From: Fimbriosthenelais zetlandica
Taxonomy: Eukaryota
Direction of reading: 5' to 3'
Length of the DNA stretch: 64,000 nt
Assembly: GCA_977030845.1 (NCBI GenBank)
Contig: OZ365111.1
Coordinates: 45,136,001-45,200,000, forward strand
This document shows, one piece after another, positions 1,295-26,000 of this stretch; the stretch's first letter is position 1; the number at the start of each line of letters is the position of its first letter. The position numbers and the translations under genes are program-made. A model generated the notes under the pieces. The model was not told where the DNA came from. It made no database searches and saw only the letters and a program-made list of their open reading frames with translations.

Positions 1295-1451
1295 NNNNNN
1301 NNNNNNNNNNNNNNNNNNNNNNNNNNNNNNNNNNNNNNNNNNNNNNNNNNNNNNNNNNNNNNNNNNNNNNNNNNNNNNNNNNNNNNNNNNNNNNNNNNNN
1401 NNNNNNNNNNNNNNNNNNNNNNNNNNNNNNNNNNNNNNNNNNNNNNNNNNN
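1295..1451. other. Assembly gap (157 N)
   Basis: Run of N in the sequence; ORFs spanning it are artefacts. Confidence 0.99.
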
Positions 1452-2525: not shown

Positions 2526-4484
2526 CTATGATATACAACAACACTTGTTTTCCTTAACCTCTCCAGAATTCTGGTCCTTTTCCCTATCGTCGCTATCTCC
2601 ATTGAGTAGCTTCTCCTCCTCCGGTTCCCCATCGTTGCTTTTGTTTGACTTATTCTTCGACCCACGCTTTTTACCTGATTTTCCTGAACTGTTACTGGCT
2701 GGGTCGGCTTCAATATCCACCTTCCCCAGCATTTCTATTTCAGATCCGGCTCCGGATTTCTCAAAGTGAACCCTTTTGATGGAAGCTTTTGGCTTCATCA
2801 CTCCATCCTTATCTGTGTTCGGCTCATTTGAAGCGTCATTGCTGTCCACTCTCAGCAATTTATCCTTCTCATCCTTTTCCCTATTTTTCTCCTCCAACAA
2901 CCTATCGATTTGAGTTTTCCCTTCTTCGTCTCTCCTCTCTAGGAGTATATGCTGTTCATATTGATCCACCCTTGGCTCGAGCTGGCCCAGGCTGGCTCTT
3001 TTAATGCTTAGTTGTCGTCTCCTTTCTTGTATGGCCTCTACGTCCACTGGCACCACTCTCTCTATAGTTTCCTGGGCACTTTCTTTCTCCGTTTTGATCA
3101 TCGGAGGTTCAGTGGTGCTGATTAGTGGCTCTGTTTCCACTTGTTTCTCATTTTGAGTTTTGGCTGGGGACGGTTCAGGTGAAGACGTGCCAAAATCAAT
3201 TGGTTCCAATTCGTCCATGCATACCATGCCTTCAGAGTCAGGGTCACTGTCTATAACTGAAGGATGGACGAACTTTTTGGGCTTCTCTTGCAGGGCTTTT
3301 GACCCTGAGCAATCACTATTGCCTTCTCTGTGCTCTATGCATATTAACAAATTATCCGGCTTATCCTCGAGTGGTGAAACTGGTGATTGGACTGTCACCA
3401 CAAATAGCTGGTTATCTTCCTTCCATTCTAGACTTGGGGATAGGGCTAGATCTAAGAGCTTCTTCCTTCCATGTTTACACAAAGAATTTTCCTCCTGGAC
3501 CGAGCCTGTCAACGTGTTTTCATCGCTGTTAGCATTTCCAACAGACTTGTTTGTTTGTGTAGTCAGTTGAATATCCTCACATAGTTCTTGTGGATTTTCA
3601 TCCATGTTGACTTTGTTCATGTCTGGATTCATCTTGGCTTGTTGACTACCTATAGATTTGTTTTTCCGTGTTAATGCTGACAAGCGATCGTCTTTTAATG
3701 ATGATTCTTCTTCCAAAGACTTTGCTCTGGAAACATTAGGTCCTTGATCTACCGACTTAGTCTTTTCTAAGCAAGCTGTTCTCTCAAAAGACTTTGCCTT
3801 TTCTACAGAAACCCCTTTTTTAATCCACAACCGTTTGTGGGGAGGTATTTCGGCGCTGCCAATGCTTTTAGATTCTTTCAATTTTTTCTTTTGTTTTTTC
3901 TCCTTCTTTTCACATTCTTTGTTTTTCTGCTGTAGAAAGAGTTCAAGTTCTGACATGCCAGATGGAGTTTTCTTTAACAAGGCATGTCTTTCACAGTGAG
4001 CACCTCGCGGTTCCAATTTGAGTTTATTTACAGGTTTGGAGTAGGAGGAAGTAGAAGAGTCTTCAGATTTGCTATCTTTTGGATGGAATGTCTTGGGAGG
4101 AGGATTCTTCTCCTTTTCAAGAAGGAACTGTTCTAACTCTGACAAGCCAGAGGCAGACTTTTCTTGTAACAAGGGGTGTTTCTCATATTGAGATGTCCTT
4201 GGGAGTATTTTTATCTTTCGTGGTCCTGTTTCCCTAATTTCACTATTGTTTGAAGTGGAAGGCGCGCTTGCATCTGCAGGCAACGTCAGTGCTTTTAAAA
4301 GCTTGCCCCTCTTTGCATTCTTTTGCTTGGCTTTACCTGAATCCATGCGTTCAGGGCAATTAGACTGGGGCTTGGTGAAGTTGGAAAGAAATGCGCTTTT
4401 ATCCTTGGTAGGTGCAGCATTTGGAAGAGTTTCAGAACCGGAGAGCTTAGTTTCCATGCCAATATCAGCCATACTTTTGGACAT
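2526..4484 (-). CDS. Uncharacterised charged, largely disordered protein (~650 aa) with three internal ~35-aa repeats, an RVxF motif and a C-terminal CaaX box
   Basis: Uninterrupted 1.97-kb ORF in AT-rich DNA; first ATG at 4484 (ORF track starts at TTG 4496); K/E/S-rich; KRVHF at 2763-2777; ends KCCCIS-stop. An upstream exon cannot be excluded. Confidence 0.8.
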   Translation of the reverse strand: MSKSMADIGMETKLSGSETLPNAAPTKDKSAFLSNFTKPQSNCPERMDSGKAKQKNAKRGKLLKALTLPADASAPSTSNNSEIRETGPRKIKILPRTSQYEKHPLLQEKSASGLSELEQFLLEKEKNPPPKTFHPKDSKSEDSSTSSYSKPVNKLKLEPRGAHCERHALLKKTPSGMSELELFLQQKNKECEKKEKKQKKKLKESKSIGSAEIPPHKRLWIKKGVSVEKAKSFERTACLEKTKSVDQGPNVSRAKSLEEESSLKDDRLSALTRKNKSIGSQQAKMNPDMNKVNMDENPQELCEDIQLTTQTNKSVGNANSDENTLTGSVQEENSLCKHGRKKLLDLALSPSLEWKEDNQLFVVTVQSPVSPLEDKPDNLLICIEHREGNSDCSGSKALQEKPKKFVHPSVIDSDPDSEGMVCMDELEPIDFGTSSPEPSPAKTQNEKQVETEPLISTTEPPMIKTEKESAQETIERVVPVDVEAIQERRRQLSIKRASLGQLEPRVDQYEQHILLERRDEEGKTQIDRLLEEKNREKDEKDKLLRVDSNDASNEPNTDKDGVMKPKASIKRVHFEKSGAGSEIEMLGKVDIEADPASNSSGKSGKKRGSKNKSNKSNDGEPEEEKLLNGDSDDREKDQNSGEVKENKCCCIS

Positions 4485-6689
4485 TATTTTTACCAAAAGA
4501 AGAAACCATGAAAAGATGACTGAACCAAGTCAGTGATCACTTAATACAGCAATGGTATAGTCCGAATGTGCTTGGATGTCTTCGCCTAAGTCTTTTGAAA
4601 CCTATGTATATACGAGTGTCAAAGCCTTTTTAATGAAACCTCTTTAAAAGTATCTTGCCAAAAGAGCAGCTCAAATTGGACTGTTAAAAAGCACTCCTGA
4701 CGATTGATCCAATGCACTGACACCTTTCAATTAACCCTGTCACATGTCGTGTGGTTCGTCTTTTATATTCATAATGATAGTATAAGATGACAATAATATT
4801 ATATCAGACCAGGGATTGTGAAATGTTAACTACATCACATTCTATGGTTCCAAGACGAACGGTAATGATCTCAGTGTGAAAAGAAAACTCTTATAATCTT
4901 ATAACATAGCACCATGCATCTCATTTCCTCAGTTCTTCTCATATTTGCCTTGACCAGTTTCTGCTGGACTATGCTCGGAGATTATACAATCAGTCCATTG
5001 TTAATTCACTAATAACATAACCATATGGATTACCCCCAAACTCTCCCTGATTTCCACCCCAAAATCTCTATATTAGTATATATGTGATGGGCCTGTTCAG
5101 GGCCTGCCTCATTCTATTCATAAGCCTGGCATGTGTCATGATCGATCATAATCCATCCTGGGTTGCGTTTTGAAAATAAAGCCCCCAAATGCAAAGCGGT
5201 GGAATGAATTAATCCTCCAAGCTTCCTGGCGGTCATGGAAAGGGTTAAAATCCAACGACCATTTTAACCGAGCTTAACCATGCATGGCTTACGAGTGATT
5301 GTTTCCCTTGTCATCTCAGCTAATTATTTAGAACCACTAACATCTGAAATAATCCATTAATGTTGTATAGAAGAAGGGGTTATTGAAAGCTGATGTATTC
5401 GCTATGATACCTCAATCCACTTTTGCTTATCCTGACCCATTGACGTTCAGAATATCAATGGAGTTATGGAATGAGTATACTGGCACAGATGGGGTGTATA
5501 GATTGATATCCAGCCTGTCACAACAGGTATTCCCTCAATAACACTGAGTCTCTCACTGTCTATAGTATTTACATACATGTCATGCGATATAATGCCACTA
5601 TACAATCATACTCCTACATCCATGGTGGTATAGCTCTAATGGCTTACTGGCACAGTGTACCTGATGCCTATTATTAATACACCCACACTGATCCTTTCAC
5701 TTGTCCATTATGATTACCTAATGAACCTTTAGGCCATATATGTATGGTAGGAGAATATGTCAGGTATATATATAATAAACGGGGATGGTTAAACGGGGGT
5801 AAATGATGGTCAGCTTTCAGGGGCGGAAACTAGTAGCGCGGGGAGGCAGTTTTTCACCCGCTCAAGCATGGTCCGGACGGTTTGTCTGCCGAGAAACATC
5901 AATATTCCCTGCTGGCATCGGTGGGCACTGACAGTGAGGGGCTTTGTTTTAGCACACTGCCACACTGCTGGGCATCTGTCCCGTGTTAGCTCGGCCAGCT
6001 TTTGTTGTCCTGGGACAAAGTTTTATAGGCTGGTCGATTCATGTCCCATGTTAGCTTATGACACACTTCCTCCCTATCTACCGTCTCCACTCCGCGTCTT
6101 ACTACTGCTGATCCTCGCTATATGATATTGAGAGAATGTGATTTCCTGATATGAGTTTCTAATAGTGCCCCCTCTTTAACACATCCAGGGTTGGTTTGGA
6201 CAAACAGGGTGATGGAGCATTAGCACAGGAGGAGAGCCATTTTGTCCATATCTGCAGGATAACATGTGCCAAGTGTAAATCCAGTGCCTGAGTCTGTGTA
6301 CCATCTGTGTGAATACAATAGTATACTACTTACATTATAGTATGTATCAACAGTGGTGGCTCTCGTTTGGATCTGTAGATTGAGGGGTATCCCATCCTCC
6401 TCCCTGCTCTCTCCCGATATCAGCTGATCATAACATGCATATCTGCATGTAATTCCATGGCGGGGATGATGATTAAAATGGCTGTATCATCCTAGCCCCC
6501 AGATGGTCAGACGGGCACTTACTCCTGGCTGTCTTGCGGGACCAGGAAGAATTGCTGGCAGCATACCATCCACCGCTTTAATTCCTCACACTGTGTACTC
6601 CTGGTGCGATGATCAGAAATGGCAATGGTGGAAGATTTATGTAATGTCTCCGACTTCAAGGATTTGCTTGCGCTGTCCCCATCTCCCAC

Positions 6690-20000: not shown

Positions 20001-23000
20001 TGATTAGTTCCTTACCACATCCTTGCACTTTTTTTAAAAAGTCCTCAAAGTTTTTTTTTCTATACCAACTTACTACGTTCTTTATGTTATAAATCTTTGT
20101 AAATTTAGTTTGTACTTTAGTGCTAATTAGCACTTCTCTCATAACTAAGCAAGGTCTATAACATGTTATCATTGAAGTTTTATGATCAATGTTTCAGTTA
20201 TTGGCTGGTCTTGATAGACAGAAACAAGACCATCTGCAGCTCAACTCTCTCACACTCTTTACAGAGGGCAGGTCAACAGGTAAAATACTATTGAGTACAT
20301 CTACTCTAATGGATTTATAATGTAAAGTCTTAGGTGATAACTTCCATTCCTTTGTTTTCTACAACTAGAGTTTTGGGTAGCATTATTTATAGATGTAGTC
20401 AGTCGGAGGGGATTCTGGGTTCTGTAACCCCCCTGCTCATGGATAAAATAAGATTTTCAACACTGGAGGGAGATGGAAAATGTATAGCAGTGTGTTTCTA
20501 GAGGCAACTGATAATTATTTAATATTATGCGATCACTGAAAGCTCAAAAACCACATTTTTGAACATTACTAAATTTCATTCAGATGATGATAAGCAGGCA
20601 TGGCTGGCCACTGTAGAAGCTCTGTCTAGTGTCCAGGTCTCGCACCATCAGCTCCAGTCTCTGCTTAAAGTAAGTTATGCTTCCCGGTAATTGGTGTCTC
20701 TGTACTGGTGCCTGGAAATGGTCTCCAAACATGGTACCTCCTGTCCACCAAGGCCATCTACTATTCTTCGTTTTAATAAAATATTGGTGCTTAAACATTT
20801 GGGACATTTAATTGTCAATATTAATATTAACATGTACATGTATTTTCAATGTATTCATTATGGAAATGTACAAGTTAGAACGGTAGTAAATCTCTTAATA
20901 CTGGAAGGAAAAGACAAATATTCAGGGGCTATCTGTTGGGCATTCTCGGGGAGATTTATGATGTTGTAAGGGGTCCTGCATTGAGAACCATACTGCAGGC
21001 CCCTTACAACATCAAGAGCATACAATACCCCGGGGCTCATATGATACGGGTAGATAAATGAATGTGTCTGAACCATTTTAATCCTGATTCAAAATGGGAC
21101 TAATTGGACTGAGTATACTTTCTCTAAAGATAGCGATAGCTTTCCATAATGTATTCTGTTTAAGTGATGAATAGGTGTTGTAGGTGAAGAAAGCACTAAG
21201 TGTTCTTGCATATAATGCAGATGGATGTATAAATTACTTGCAGCTTTTGAGTGCCATCCTTCACCTGAACCAGATTGTAATTAGCGTGGAGGAGGAGGAC
21301 GAGGATGTATGCTGTATTGACCCAGTAGATGGTGAGTTAGAGCTAAACCTCCTCATAGCAAACGACCGGGAGTTGGGAATTAGCCAGGGATGGCTCCCAA
21401 ATCCGTCTTCTCCAAGGAGAGCTTTCATGAATATAATTGATGAAGGGAAATATAATAGGAAAGAATCTAAATAAATCAGACAGAAGCAGTGTAGGAAGAA
21501 GGTCTGTGAAAATGTAGGAGTCAAACTCGTGTTTCCAAAATAATTAATATTCTTTTAGAATGTTATTTAAATAATGCAGTGGTGCATCGCATCATACGAC
21601 CACTAAATGCTCAGAACGAAAATAATGAATATATTCTGCTTAAGGATTCTGTACCCTGCTGTAAGGAGAAGCTTGCATGTTCTAACCTATCTTGTCCACC
21701 TTTGTTTAGATCTTGCTCATCAGGAGAGGCACACACCCTCTGAGATCACCTGCCAGCTGCTGGCCATCGACCAGACAGCTTTAGTGAAGGCCTTGACTCA
21801 CCGTCGTATAACTGCCTCTCACGCTCGCAGAAAGAGCGTTTTTGCTAAACCGTGCAGCCCGGCTGAGACTCAGGCACGTCGTGACTGTCTAGCTAAACTT
21901 CTCTATAATCAGTTGTTTGACTGGCTTGTGACAGTCATCAATCGGTGCATATATACAGACCAGATCCATACTACCATAGGTGAGTAACTCAGCCCATATT
22001 ACCATCAGCATTTGCCAATAATGTCAGTGGCCTATCAGCAATTGCCCATCAGCAATTGACCATCAGCAATTGCCCCCGAGCAATTGCCCCCACGCAAGTG
22101 CCAGCAGGTGTCTATTAAAATAATTGCCCATCAGCCATTATCAATTGCCAGGCCAATTAGTCACCAGTAATTGCCTATCGGCAATTGCGTTGCCTCTCAG
22201 CAATTGTCCATCTGCAATTGTCCTTTTGTTGTTAAAGTGTCAATCAGCAATTTCAATCAGCAGTTGCCTCTTCAGCAATTGCCCGGAAATCGCCAAATAC
22301 TCCATCAGCATTTCTCGGAAACTTTTTCTTAAAATTAGGCCTGCTTTTGTAGTTGTTAACTTCTCCATACTAACGTTTAACTTGTTGTTTGTACCTATGA
22401 TAATGTACCTTTTATTTCACCTGGCAGGTATATTGGACATCTATGGCTTTGAGAGTTTCCAGGTAAACAGTCTGGAGCAGCTGTGTATAAATTACGCCAA
22501 TGAGTGTCTCCAGCAGCATTATGTAACACACTTCCTGCGCGACCTGCAGGCCGAGTATGCTGAAGAGGCCATTACCTGGAGTGATGTACAATTTGTGGAC
22601 AACCGGCCCTGTCTCAGCCTACTGGAGGGGTGCGGGCCAGCCAACCCGGGCCTCTTCTCCCTTATCAACGAGGTGATGTTTAGCCCATTTATACAAATCA
22701 AAATAAAAACAGATTAGATTAACACTAAGATTTGTATTCCATTTGCGACCGCTGTGAATTTGTTCTCGTTCTCTTACCCCAAACAGAGCTGCTAGGTTTC
22801 TGGAAAATCACATATTCTTACTCGTTATATTGGGACTTATTCCAGATGAAAATTATTGAATATTGCTGCTATGGGACATACTTAGGCCTATAGATAAAAA
22901 TAACATATCCTGCTGATGTAAATTTAATGTAATTTAAATATCCGGAGATTGTATGGCATTGTACATGTAGTGCTAATGAGTTGTGCCATTTGTCAAGAAA

Positions 23001-26000
23001 ATCTGTCCTTTTGAATTACTTTTAATGCATTTTCTCCCTTTGGTCTGCAGGAATGTCAGGTGAATCGGCCTGACGGGGATGAAGGTTTGAGAGACCGTCT
23101 TCTCACCTCTCTGGGCAGTGGTAAACCGGGCCACAATGACCCAGGTAGACGTGACTCTAGTCCTCCTGGTCAGCTTGGTACACCCCGACAAAACAGAACT
23201 GACCCCAGCTTTATAGTCCAACACTACGCCAGCCCGGTCACTTATAGTCTGAGGGGACTCCTGGAAAAGAACAAGGTAAATCTTATATTATCTGTAGTTG
23301 GTCTAAATAAAATTTTGGTTGTCTATGTGTTATGCCCAAGCAACATATTAAACAAAATTTGTTCCTGCTGTTCCTATGGACTTTTCGGACTTTCAGAATT
23401 TTCCTGTTGGACTGGCTGCAGCATGTGCGTCTTTGAAATTAATTTCATGTTAATTTGTGCTGCTTTCAGGACAATGTCCCGCCTGAGTTGGTTGAGTTAC
23501 TACAGAACAGCTCTGAGAGTTTCATTGTAGAACTCTTTGAGAATTATGAGACAGAACAACCGGGTAAGAAGAAGAAGACTGTGCTGGCAAAGTTCAAGGT
23601 AATATATACGGCTATTACTTTATTAATATTCCCTTCATCATCTAAGAGCTGCTAGTTTTTCAGCTCTAATTGATATCTCTGGTATATTTATCTCGCTCGT
23701 TGCTGTGAAAAAGATGAATAGATTTGAGATGATTGAGTAAAATAGAGGGAGATTTCCTATTATCCTGCTCTGATATTGATGATGCTTTTTAAACCCCCAT
23801 CAGTCGTCACTTGACCATCTCATGGAGGCGTTGAGCCGCACTGAGCCTCACTATATCCGCTGTATAAAGCCCAAGGAGAGCAGCTCCCCCGCCGCCCCGG
23901 ACCAGGCCTTTGTAATGGAGCAGCTGAGAGCCTGCGGTATAGTGGAGACAGTGGAGGTAAACAGGAAAGGCTATCCTTCAAGGTGAGTCCAATGACAGCC
24001 GTTACTCCAAGGGTGCAGTCTCCCCATCGCATTAATCAACACACTATACTTCACGTGTAGAATGCTTACCTTGCATTTACTTTTGATTGTACCTAATACA
24101 CAAATAGACTCCAGATGCAAAGAGGTGGAACCTCCTCTCTAGGATTCTCCTATAATAAATTTAAGTAGGTAATTTGAACCCCCAGCAACCCTCCCCCCCC
24201 CCCCCCCCCCCTCCCACCATTCAATCCAAAAAGGAAGTCATTGAAATGAAAAAATCGTTACTTCCGCTCGAGTGCCATTCTTGGTATAATTTGTTCTTAT
24301 ATAAAGATCCACCTTTTTTTTTAAAATAATGAAAAAAAGACTATTACTTCCTGCAGAGTGCTATTCTGGCCGTTCATAAATTGTTCTAAGAATTTTTTCT
24401 TCCATTGTTCCGCCCCCACACCAATCTCCGCCCCACCATGGTAGGATAATAATCAGGATATTGTCTGACGTTTTATGTGATATTCTTTGGTAACCTTGCG
24501 GGGGCAGACGACCATAGTATAAGAGCGTAGTATGTATTTAACGATACAGATGCCTATGAAACATGCATGAGAAGAAGGCGTCCATTCTCTTGTATATGGC
24601 CAGCCAGTGCTTGTAAACTGATCGCCTTTCTTTCCCTGCCCCACCACAATCTGCTGATATAGGATACCTTATGAAAGATTCCTTCAACACTACTCCCTCA
24701 TCCTGCGCTCAATGCCCGAGGAGGAGCTCCAAGTGACCAGCGGCCAGCCAGAAAGATGTAACAAAGAAAATGAACTGGTTTTCGATCCGCTTGATGTTCT
24801 CTATCAAAAACAACTCCAGCTCACCCCGCGAAGACAAAGCGCTACAGCGAAAAGAAAGCTTCGACGGAGGGCAGGTGAGAATATAATAATTAATTATATA
24901 TGAGCTTGGTTATAGATTGGTCCATGATTCTATACTTCATGGCAGTGTTCATTTATCAATCACATTTGCTTGAATTAATTTTTAAAAGTTCCCTAGCCAT
25001 TGTGTGTATGTTTGCCGGAATTTAAGTTAATAGATTTGTCCTAGCCTTTCTTTTTATTTACTAGTCGATTTCGCCTCTGTTGATTTGTTTTGCTATAGCC
25101 CCGGGTTCCATAGAGATAAAAGAAAGCAAAGGTTGGTTTCTTTGCTGAATTTGTGGCTAATAATTCCAGTCAAGGTGCTTTATTGCTTTATTTTATATCA
25201 TTCTTTATTTGGAAAACCTATAGGGGTTTTCCAAATAAAGAATGACATTATTATGCATAAATTAACATAAGTTATGTATAAAGTTATAGGGGTTTTCCAA
25301 ATAAAGAATATACGTATCTAAGCCCATGCCACACCCTGAGCCTAAAGAATATGTTTGATGGGCCAGTGATCAAATACTATATTCCTACTGCTTACTCGGT
25401 TTAAAAGTACATGTAACTTATTGTAAGTTATACAAATGAGCACATTACATAAGGTAACTTTGTTGCTTGATCCAATGAAGAAAATTGCATTATATTGATT
25501 GAAGAGAAAGCTTATTCGGCATCTGCTCTGCTATCTTTATGGTGTTATATAATATGTCCATAGGTTGCCGTTATGGTGGTGGTAAGACATTGACATTGTT
25601 TTAGGGTTGTTCCTTTTCCTATGAGCTCCATGCTTATACTCATTTACTTGTAGTGATTCGTTGATAAAGCTTACATTTTTAGTTGAGAAAGTTTAGGCTT
25701 CAGATTGGCTTTATGGACAGCACTGCTTTATATTCACGAGATTAAATATAAATGAAAATGATTAAATTGACATTATTATGCATAAATTAACATAAGTTAT
25801 GTATAAATTAACATAAACTATGCATAAATTAACCAATTTCCTCAAGCAATGGTAGTCTTTGTTTTACACGTCTAGTAATGGTAAGATGGGTTATATGTTA
25901 TGTAATGTAATACTTATGATCATGTACTTTGATTAGCCTACCTCTCTTTAATCTACAGGACTTTCTAGCTGTGACCACACCCGAAAGCTTACCGCGTCCA

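What the first reader, a model, noticed from the sequence alone, without database searches (positions are those of the whole stretch)
2880..4211. Unrecognised ~35-aa repeat, three copies, in an orphan protein
Seen: three dispersed segments of the 2526-4484 ORF align: KILPRTSQYEKHPLLQEKSASGLSELEQFLLEKEK (4211-4107), KLEPRGAHCERHALLKKTP-SGMSELELFLQQKNK (4019-3918) and QLEPRVDQYEQHILLERRDEEGKTQIDRLLEEKNR (2984-2880). The consensus is L-x-P-R-x2-[QH][YC]E-x-H-x-LL-x5/6-G-x-[ST][EQ][LI][ED]-x-[FL]L-x-[EQ]K. The linkers are unrelated and low-complexity, so the pattern looks selected at protein level. I cannot match it to a family I know. Inference: a repeated helical binding module in a disordered scaffold.
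Basis: partly seen in the sequence, partly recalled or inferred. Interest (0 to 1): 0.75.

Follow-up and report, generated by a model that had tools for sequence, protein, structure and literature searches.

The report
New 35-residue repeat in worm scaffold protein
The three look-alike segments are real copies of a conserved, undescribed 35-residue module in a mostly disordered annelid-type protein that also carries a phosphatase-docking motif and a lipid-anchor tail; what the module binds is still unknown.

Summary
The three segments translate exactly as reported and match each other far better than shuffled controls. They lie in one single-exon, single-copy gene (CDS 2526-4484, minus strand, 652 aa) under strong purifying selection: dN/dS is about 0.02 in the repeats and 0.10 elsewhere.

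The protein is not an orphan. A profile of the repeat finds 56 true relatives among 1.84 billion representatives. Nearly all complete ones share one layout: 2-4 repeats, then a [KR][KR]V[HR]F motif (RVxF type, PP1 docking), then a C-terminal CaaX box. The only named relative is a hypothetical protein of the annelid Paralvinella palmiformis.

The copies are positional orthologues (A, B, C), so the triplication is old. AlphaFold2 models each copy as a confident local unit (pLDDT 82-96): short helix, glycine loop, capped amphipathic helix. The three do not pack together (pTM 0.30). Pfam, PDB sequences and AFDB folds give no match.

Best reading: three non-equivalent ligand-binding modules on a lipid-anchored, probably PP1-targeting, disordered scaffold. 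The ligand is unknown, and PP1 binding could not be tested conclusively. The same window's KRVHF/CaaX tail was noted separately by this scan (s1-183044).

The parts
2526..4484 (-). Single-exon CDS of 652 aa plus stop. It encodes a mostly disordered protein of a family with the layout repeats, then RVxF, then CaaX.
   Evidence: The ORF is. Conservation with the 74%-identical orthologue begins exactly at ATG 4484. In-frame stops lie 14-15 codons upstream in both species, and the sequence between is not conserved. dN/dS is 0.08 overall. The Paralvinella relative is also annotated as one exon, 1863 nt for 620 aa.
4101..4211 (-). Repeat A (aa 92-128), type L-P-R-T-x-Q-Y-E-x-H-P-L-L-Q ... S-G-L-S-E-x-E-x-F-L
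   Evidence: HMM score 70 bits. Nearest copies in other proteins are all A-type. AlphaFold2 pLDDT is 82-91, with a short helix at 104-107, a loop, and a helix at 116-126.
3909..4019 (-). Repeat B (aa 156-192), type L-x-P-R-G-A-x-x-E-x-H-x-L-L-x-K ... S-G-x-S-E-L-E-x-Y/F-L
   Evidence: HMM score 61 bits. It is a positional orthologue of the B copies. pLDDT is 93-95, and the helix at 179-208 continues into a K/E-rich stretch.
2874..2984 (-). Repeat C (aa 501-537), type L-E-P-R-x-x-Q-Y-E-x-H-x-L-L-E-x-R-D-E-x-G
   Evidence: HMM score 53 bits. It is a positional orthologue of the C copies. pLDDT is 84-93, with a helix at 525-546.
2985..3002 (-). K-R-A-S-L-G, a basophilic-kinase (PKA-type) consensus site directly upstream of repeat C
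   Evidence: K495, R496, S498, L499 and G500 are invariant in the four close orthologues. [RK][RK]x[ST] occurs within 12 residues before 11 of 32 C copies, against 4.7% of all 12-residue windows of the family's proteins. Phosphorylation is an inference.
2763..2777 (-). K-R-V-H-F, a PP1-docking (RVxF-type) motif
   Evidence: Translation is. [KR][KRH]V[HR]F lies after the last repeat in most complete relatives. V572 and F574 are at least 90% conserved in the 38-sequence alignment. The region has pLDDT below 50, consistent with an accessible linear motif.
2529..2543 (-). C-C-C-I-S, a C-terminal CaaX box (farnesylation type) with extra upstream cysteines that could be palmitoylated
   Evidence: Translation is. 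C649 is invariant in alignment A4. Relatives end in CCVVS, CCIIL, CTMS, CIIS, CVIL and similar.

Best explanation
The three segments are copies of a previously undescribed protein module of about 35-40 residues. Its pattern is a basic patch, then L-x-P-R-x-x-Q-Y-E-x-H-x-L-L, then a short loop ending in an invariant G, then a capped amphipathic helix [LM]-S-E-L-E-x-[FY]-L-x-E-K-E. Each copy is an independent, locally ordered helix-loop-helix unit in an otherwise disordered chain, so the layout is beads on a string rather than a repeat domain. The triplication is ancient, and the copies have become three distinct, position-specific types (A, B, C). Every complete relative combines the modules with an RVxF-type PP1-docking motif and a prenylation (CaaX) tail. 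The protein therefore most likely works as a lipid-anchored scaffold that holds protein phosphatase 1 at a membrane, with the three modules as docking sites for partner or substrate proteins. Basophilic-kinase sites next to some copies may regulate this. Shown here: the repeat, its conservation, its local order, and its co-occurrence with RVxF and CaaX. Inferred: PP1 binding, lipidation, and ligand binding by the modules.
For: A profile search of 1.84e9 representatives gave 58 hits, of which 56 are true relatives, mostly with 2-4 copies each. In 91 of 99 cases the nearest copy in another protein sits at the same ordinal position. Near-invariant positions are P4/R5 in 98 of 99 copies, L14 in 96, G22 in 93, L15 in 87 and E10 in 85. 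dN/dS is 0.019 in the repeats against 0.097 outside them. AlphaFold2 on the full-length protein gives mean pLDDT 55, with the repeats as the 82-95 islands. The compact tri-repeat region of a relative gives mean pLDDT 82 (90-96 in the repeats) but pTM 0.30, so the copies do not pack on each other. An RVxF-type motif after the last repeat and a CaaX end are found in most complete members. The gene is single-copy in this genome.
Against: No partner was identified. The one complex prediction, PP1c with aa 495-600, gave no verdict and counts neither way. Expression could not be checked because no sequencing run was listed. RVxF-like and CaaX-like strings are short, although their conservation argues against chance. 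High local pLDDT could reflect a conserved helix propensity rather than a binding function.
Confidence: 0.5

Rival explanations
1. The modules are phospho-regulated elements that are themselves substrates of the PP1 docked on the same chain. This would resemble the MELT repeats of KNL1, which are phosphorylated to recruit a reader and reset by PP1 bound at KNL1's RVSF motif. It overlaps with the best explanation and differs mainly in who acts on whom.
For: S/T is conserved at two positions around the invariant G: S21 in 59 of 99 copies and S/T24 in 86 of 99. S-E-L-E fits an acidophilic-kinase consensus (my knowledge). Basophilic sites are enriched just upstream of the C copies. An RVxF motif sits on the same chain.
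Against: S24-x-x-E27 is also a textbook helix N-capping box. AlphaFold2 starts the helix exactly there, so structure alone explains its conservation. No phosphorylation data exist.
Confidence: 0.15
2. The first half of each copy is an acidic dileucine sorting signal ([DE]xxxL[LI], here E-K-H-P-L-L, E-R-H-A-L-L and E-Q-H-I-L-L). On this reading the lipid-anchored protein engages clathrin adaptor complexes (AP-1/2/3) multivalently.
For: E10, L14 and L15 are among the best conserved positions, and P is the commonest residue at -1. The regex matches 102 of 148 copies. The resemblance to E-x-x-P-L-L-type lysosomal and melanosomal signals is from my own knowledge.
Against: 31% of copies fail the regex, with Q at -4 or F at the second L. 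The even better conserved P4, R5, Q8, Y9, H12 and G22, and the whole second helix, are not explained by an adaptor signal. No adaptor binding was tested.
Confidence: 0.12
3. The modules contact PP1c directly as auxiliary docking or inhibitory elements, in the manner of MyPhoNE, SILK or the inhibitor-2 helix.
For: R-x-x-Q at the start of the repeat matches the first half of MyPhoNE (R-x-x-Q-[VIL]-[KR]-x-[YW]) in 119 of 148 copies. Repeat C lies about 35-70 residues before the RVxF motif.
Against: The full MyPhoNE pattern matches 0 of 148 copies. Three copies, separated here by 27 and 310 residues, cannot all use one site. The distance from the last copy to the RVxF motif ranges from about 30 to over 220 residues among relatives.
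Confidence: 0.08
4. The copies are degenerate units of a known solenoid or loop fold (ankyrin-like or EF-hand-like) that pack into one domain.
For: Two ankyrin-repeat proteins appear as weak hits of the repeat profile, at E 7e-6 and 3e-4. The helix-loop-helix shape has an invariant G in the loop.
Against: hhalign against the ankyrin hit gives 19% probability over only 19 columns. No Pfam ankyrin or EF-hand hit appears even at E<=10. pTM is 0.30 for the compact tri-repeat. Linkers between copies vary from about 10 to 310 residues. The loop lacks the EF-hand D1/E12 ligands, as the sequence shows directly.
Confidence: 0.04

Closest known systems
TIMAP / MYPT3 (PPP1R16B/A), prenylated PP1 regulatory subunits
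   Same: Both have an RVxF PP1-docking motif, repeated modules of about 33-35 residues, and a C-terminal CaaX box for membrane localisation. The TIMAP architecture is taken from PMC10296329.
   Different: TIMAP's repeats are tandem ankyrin repeats that form a domain and lie after the RVxF motif, and it has a MyPhoNE motif. Here the repeats are dispersed, precede the RVxF motif, do not pack, are not ankyrin, and MyPhoNE is absent.
PHACTR family (RPEL repeats plus C-terminal PP1-binding region)
   Same: Both are disordered PP1 regulators carrying several short helical ligand-binding repeats on the same chain as the PP1 site. In PHACTR the repeats bind G-actin (my knowledge).
   Different: No RPEL (PF02755) match appears at E<=10. 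The key residues are P-R rather than R-P, with different spacing. PHACTR has no CaaX box.
KNL1 (MELT repeats plus SILK/RVSF PP1 docking)
   Same: Both are long disordered scaffolds with repeated short recognition modules and an RVxF motif on one polypeptide (my knowledge).
   Different: The repeat sequences are unrelated. KNL1 is a kinetochore protein without a lipid anchor, and its PP1 motifs are N-terminal.
Paralemmin family
   Same: Both are largely disordered or helical proteins anchored by a CaaX box with adjacent palmitoylatable cysteines, like the C-C-C-I-S tail here (my knowledge).
   Different: No Paralemmin (PF03285) match appears. Paralemmins have no RVxF motif and no such repeats.
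GADD34 / PPP1R15A (about 34-residue PEST repeats upstream of KVRF)
   Same: Both have several copies of a module of about 34 residues in a disordered region N-terminal to an RVxF motif, on a membrane-associated protein (my knowledge).
   Different: GADD34's repeats are acidic PEST repeats in tandem. No sequence relation was detectable, and its membrane association is through an N-terminal helix rather than prenylation. Not compared directly here.

Membership tests
RVxF-type PP1-interacting protein | Motif fitting [HKR]-[ACHKMNQRSTV]-V-[CHKNQRST]-[FW] | tested here: met
   K-R-V-H-F lies at aa 570-574. The consensus itself is quoted from my knowledge of the PP1 literature.
RVxF-type PP1-interacting protein | Motif conserved in relatives and lying in an accessible, disordered stretch | tested here: met
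   V572 and F574 are at least 90% conserved in 38 sequences. The motif is present after the last repeat in most complete members. pLDDT is below 50 at aa 550-590.
RVxF-type PP1-interacting protein | Physical binding to the PP1 catalytic subunit | tested here: inconclusive
   The complex prediction with a full-length PP1c ORF (L021) gave 'no answer': score 0.40, equal to a control. A biochemical test is needed.
CaaX-prenylated protein | Cys at -4 from the C-terminus, followed by two mostly aliphatic residues and X | tested here: met
   The protein ends C-C-I-S then stop. The Cys is invariant in A4. Relatives end in S or M (farnesyl type) or L (geranylgeranyl type).
CaaX-prenylated protein | Actual lipid modification | not testable with these tools
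   Metabolic labelling or mass spectrometry is needed.
Ankyrin repeat | Match to ankyrin profiles; tandem units that stack | tested here: not met
   No Pfam hit at E<=10. hhalign gives 19% probability. The copies are dispersed, and pTM is 0.30.
RPEL repeat (PHACTR/MRTF) | Match to PF02755; R-P-x-x-x-E-L core | tested here: not met
   No Pfam hit. The core here is P-R-x-x-Q-Y-E.
MyPhoNE motif | R-x-x-Q-[VIL]-[KR]-x-[YW] | tested here: not met
   0 of 148 copies match, although R-x-x-Q alone is present in 119.
[DE]xxxL[LI] adaptor-binding sorting signal | Acidic residue at -4 and L-[LIM] | tested here: inconclusive
   102 of 148 copies match, including all three window copies. Binding to AP complexes was not tested, and most of the conserved positions are not explained by this signal.
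EF-hand | 12-residue loop with D at position 1 and E/D at position 12; Pfam match | tested here: not met
   No Pfam hit. The loop between L15 and the helix is only about 7-8 residues and lacks those ligands.

The most novel reading that the evidence does not exclude
The module is a new autonomous recognition mini-domain of about 35 residues. Its three diverged versions each recruit a different partner to a farnesylated and palmitoylated PP1 holoenzyme. That would make a lineage-restricted (annelid or lophotrochozoan) membrane phosphatase hub, tuned by kinase sites placed directly beside the modules.
Probability: 0.3. Interest if true: 0.55.

Novelty: new variant of a known kind. Interest (0 to 1): 0.42.

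Why it matters
PP1 gets its specificity from about 200 mostly disordered partner proteins, which are built from short motifs. A new, well-conserved family that joins an RVxF motif, a lipid anchor and three copies of an undescribed module would add a new recognition element to that toolkit. It would also give annelid biology a testable membrane-phosphatase scaffold. The repeat profile (44-70 bits per copy) is specific enough to annotate the family at once. The family seems taxonomically narrow and no partner is known, so the wider impact is moderate.

Tried and rejected
- **Pfam:** the window protein (E<=10) and five relatives (E<=1) gave nothing relevant.
- **PDB sequence search with the repeat profile at E<=10:** no hit.
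- **ESM Atlas feature search:** two queries gave nothing usable.
- **Foldseek against AFDB clusters with the tri-repeat model:** best E was 0.37 with TM at most 0.23, so no match.
- **Full-text search for the motif strings:** no paper.
- **Sequencing runs:** none was listed for kind 'any' or 'rna', and the first call failed as busy. Expression and 5' exons were therefore not checked with reads, and read laying was not used.
- **Names for more relatives:** Two further homology searches named only the Paralvinella protein. The taxonomic range is therefore open.
- **PP1c from the own genome:** it exists only as short exons. The two long metallophosphatase ORFs are MRE11-like and purple-acid-phosphatase-like. 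A full-length PP1c ORF was taken instead from a metagenome contig; it is 100% identical to the own genome's exon over those 79 residues.
- **Complex prediction, PP1c with aa 495-600:** 'no answer', score 0.40 equal to a control. It is not evidence either way.
- **Readings rejected:** ankyrin, EF-hand, MyPhoNE, RPEL and a packed repeat domain (see the membership tests).
- **Readings considered from memory and dropped** because spacing or residues do not fit: WH2/LKKT (only copy B has L-L-K-K-T), the SAP motif, the B56 L-x-x-I-x-E motif, calcineurin L-x-V-P, and the beta-TrCP degron.

Full report
**Observation.** The minus-strand ORF 2526..4496 is present. Pairwise local BLOSUM62 scores are 78, 71 and 58. 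Shuffled controls give about 20 +/- 4, and 0 of 2000 shuffles reach the observed value. A repeat HMM scores the window copies at 70, 61 and 53 bits and finds no fourth copy. In the whole 447-Mb assembly the profile hits only these three places, so this is one single-copy gene.

**Is it a real gene?**
- The closest relative, P0001, is 74% identical and 641 aa long. It aligns end to end.
- Nucleotide conservation between the window and that orthologue's contig starts exactly at ATG 4484.
- Both species have an in-frame stop 14-15 codons upstream, with unrelated residues in between. The CDS is therefore a single exon. The annotated Paralvinella relative is also single-exon, 1863 nt for 620 aa.
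- Nei-Gojobori dN/dS between the window and the orthologue is 0.08 overall, 0.019 in the repeats and 0.097 outside them. dS is saturated at about 1.9, so these ratios are approximate.
- No sequencing run could be listed, so transcription was not tested directly.

**The family.**
- A profile of 28 repeat copies (A2) was searched against 1.84 billion representative proteins. It returned 58 proteins at E<=1e-3 and 27 at E<=1e-30.
- Two weak hits are ankyrin proteins and are false positives. hhalign gives 19% probability over 19 columns.
- The remaining 56 share one architecture: a variable N-terminus, then 2-4 repeats (three in most complete members), then [KR][KRH]V[HR]F, then a basic stretch and a CaaX end such as CCCIS, CCVVS, CCIIL, CTMS, CIIS or CVIL.
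- Many relatives also carry a Cys-rich segment after the last repeat and an E-E-I-F-E-P-R-P-S-T-S motif before the first. The window protein has neither.
- The only member with a name is a hypothetical protein of the annelid Paralvinella palmiformis. Other agents' notes call this genome annelid-like.

**Anatomy of the repeat.**
- Over 99 copies from three-copy proteins, the near-invariant positions are P4 and R5 (98 of 99), L14 (96), G22 (93), L15 (87), E10 (85), L30 and E32 (82) and Q8 (78).
- A basic patch and a conserved L precede the P-R.
- The copies are positional orthologues. In 91 of 99 cases the most similar copy in another protein occupies the same ordinal position.
- The three positions have distinct consensus sequences: A is L-P-R-T-x-Q-Y-E-x-H-P-L-L-Q-x-R, B is P-R-G-A-x-x-E-x-H-x-L-L-x-K, and C is L-L-E-x-R-D-E-x-G.
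- The triplication therefore predates the radiation of the family, and each copy has since been constrained separately.

**Structure prediction.**
- With a 38-sequence alignment, the full-length model has mean pLDDT 55 and pTM 0.29. The repeats are the high-confidence islands, with blocks of 82-95. Each shows a short helix at H-P-L-L, a five-residue loop closed by a bridge around the invariant G, and then a helix starting at S-E-L-E. S-x-x-E at that point is a classical N-capping box (my knowledge).
- To test whether the copies pack together, I folded the compact tri-repeat region of a relative (P0013:90-232, alignment A5). Mean pLDDT was 82, with 90-96 in the repeats, but pTM was only 0.30.
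- The copies are therefore confidently ordered locally and independent of each other. They are beads on a string, not a solenoid.
- A Foldseek search of AFDB clusters found nothing.

**Linkers.**
- The A-B linker is S/P-rich and poorly conserved, at 40-50% identity to the closest orthologue.
- The 310-aa B-C linker holds three blocks that are 83-97% identical to P0001 and conserved in P0002 and P0003. They lie at about aa 196-262, 338-385 and 401-445. The second has a predicted helix plus hairpin at pLDDT about 79.
- These blocks are an insertion specific to the window's subfamily. In other members the B-C linker is about 15-100 residues.
- Across the whole family only the repeats, the RVxF motif and the CaaX box are kept.

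**Mechanism.**
- Shown: a conserved, locally ordered, triplicated module that always travels with an RVxF-type motif and a CaaX tail. The motif, K-R-V-H-F, fits the stringent PP1-docking consensus and sits in a low-confidence stretch. The tail is C-C-C-I-S.
- Inferred: the protein is lipid-anchored and docks PP1. The three non-equivalent modules are docking sites for partners or substrates. A Kemptide-like K-R-A-S-L-G lies directly before copy C and is invariant in close orthologues. Similar basophilic sites precede 11 of 32 C copies, against a 4.7% background. This suggests kinase control.
- I tried to test PP1 docking. The own genome has PP1c only in short exons. I therefore took a full-length PP1c ORF from a metagenome contig that is 100% identical to the own exon over 79 residues, and ran one complex prediction with aa 495-600. 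It returned 'no answer', score 0.40 equal to a control, and is not used as evidence.

**Rivals.**
- *Acidic dileucine signal.* Each window copy contains E-x-x-x-L-L, and 102 of 148 copies match. This would leave the best-conserved residues and the second helix unexplained.
- *MyPhoNE-like PP1 contact.* R-x-x-Q is common, but the full pattern matches 0 of 148 copies.
- *KNL1-like phospho-module.* This is compatible with the data and not exclusive of the main model.
- *Packed ankyrin- or EF-hand-like domain.* This is rejected.

**Comparison with known systems.**
- The nearest functional analogue is TIMAP/MYPT3, which combines RVxF, repeats and CaaX (PMC10296329). Its repeats are stacked ankyrin units placed after the RVxF motif.
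- PHACTR (RPEL repeats plus a PP1 site) and KNL1 (MELT repeats plus RVSF) are analogous in logic but not in sequence.
- No Pfam family, solved structure or paper matches the module.

**Verdict.** The module is a real, new sequence module in a new, apparently lineage-restricted family of a known general kind: a disordered, motif-built, membrane-tethered candidate PP1 regulator. The finding is solid as an observation and moderately interesting. Its ligand is the open question.

Noticed in passing
window 3699-3899, 3330-3473, 3150-3284 (minus strand; aa 196-262, 338-385, 401-445): There are three further conserved blocks inside the long B-C linker, kept in the four closest orthologues only. They are a K/E-rich helix followed by K-R-L-W-I-K-K-G...S-F-E-R-T-A-C-L-E-K; L-L-D-L-A-L-S-P-S-L-E-W with a predicted helix plus beta-hairpin (pLDDT about 79); and an acidic V-I-D-S-D-P-D-S-E-G-M-V-C-M-D-E-L-E-P-I-D-F block. 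Their function is unknown.
   Followed up: partly
window 2985-3002 (minus strand; aa 495-500): A Kemptide-like K-R-A-S-L-G site sits directly upstream of repeat C and is invariant in close orthologues. Related R-R-x-S sites precede many C copies and some A copies in relatives.
   Followed up: partly
relatives, e.g. P0006:477-496, P0018:258-277: A Cys-rich segment (G-K-C-S-x-K-C-x-C-K-N-x-x-C-x-x-C-K) lies between the last repeat and the RVxF motif in many relatives. It is absent from the window protein. It could be a metal-binding or palmitoylation cluster.
   Followed up: no
relatives, e.g. P0018:1-12, P0006:184-195, P0013:57-68: A conserved E-E-I-F-E-P-R-P-S-T-S motif lies upstream of repeat A in several subfamilies. 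It is missing in the window protein.
   Followed up: no
C-termini of relatives: The X residue of the CaaX box differs between subfamilies. S or M predicts farnesyl, and L predicts geranylgeranyl. One or two extra cysteines sit just upstream in many members, which suggests different lipid anchors within one family.
   Followed up: no
window 1295-1451: A run of N lies about 1.1 kb downstream of the gene's stop codon. It is an assembly gap or masked stretch and was left untouched.
   Followed up: no
window about 21600-23500 (+ strand): ORF fragments here carry myosin-motor-like sequence (for example [10 protein letters not shown] and [11 protein letters not shown]). No large ORF lies between 4.5 and 21 kb.
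   Followed up: no
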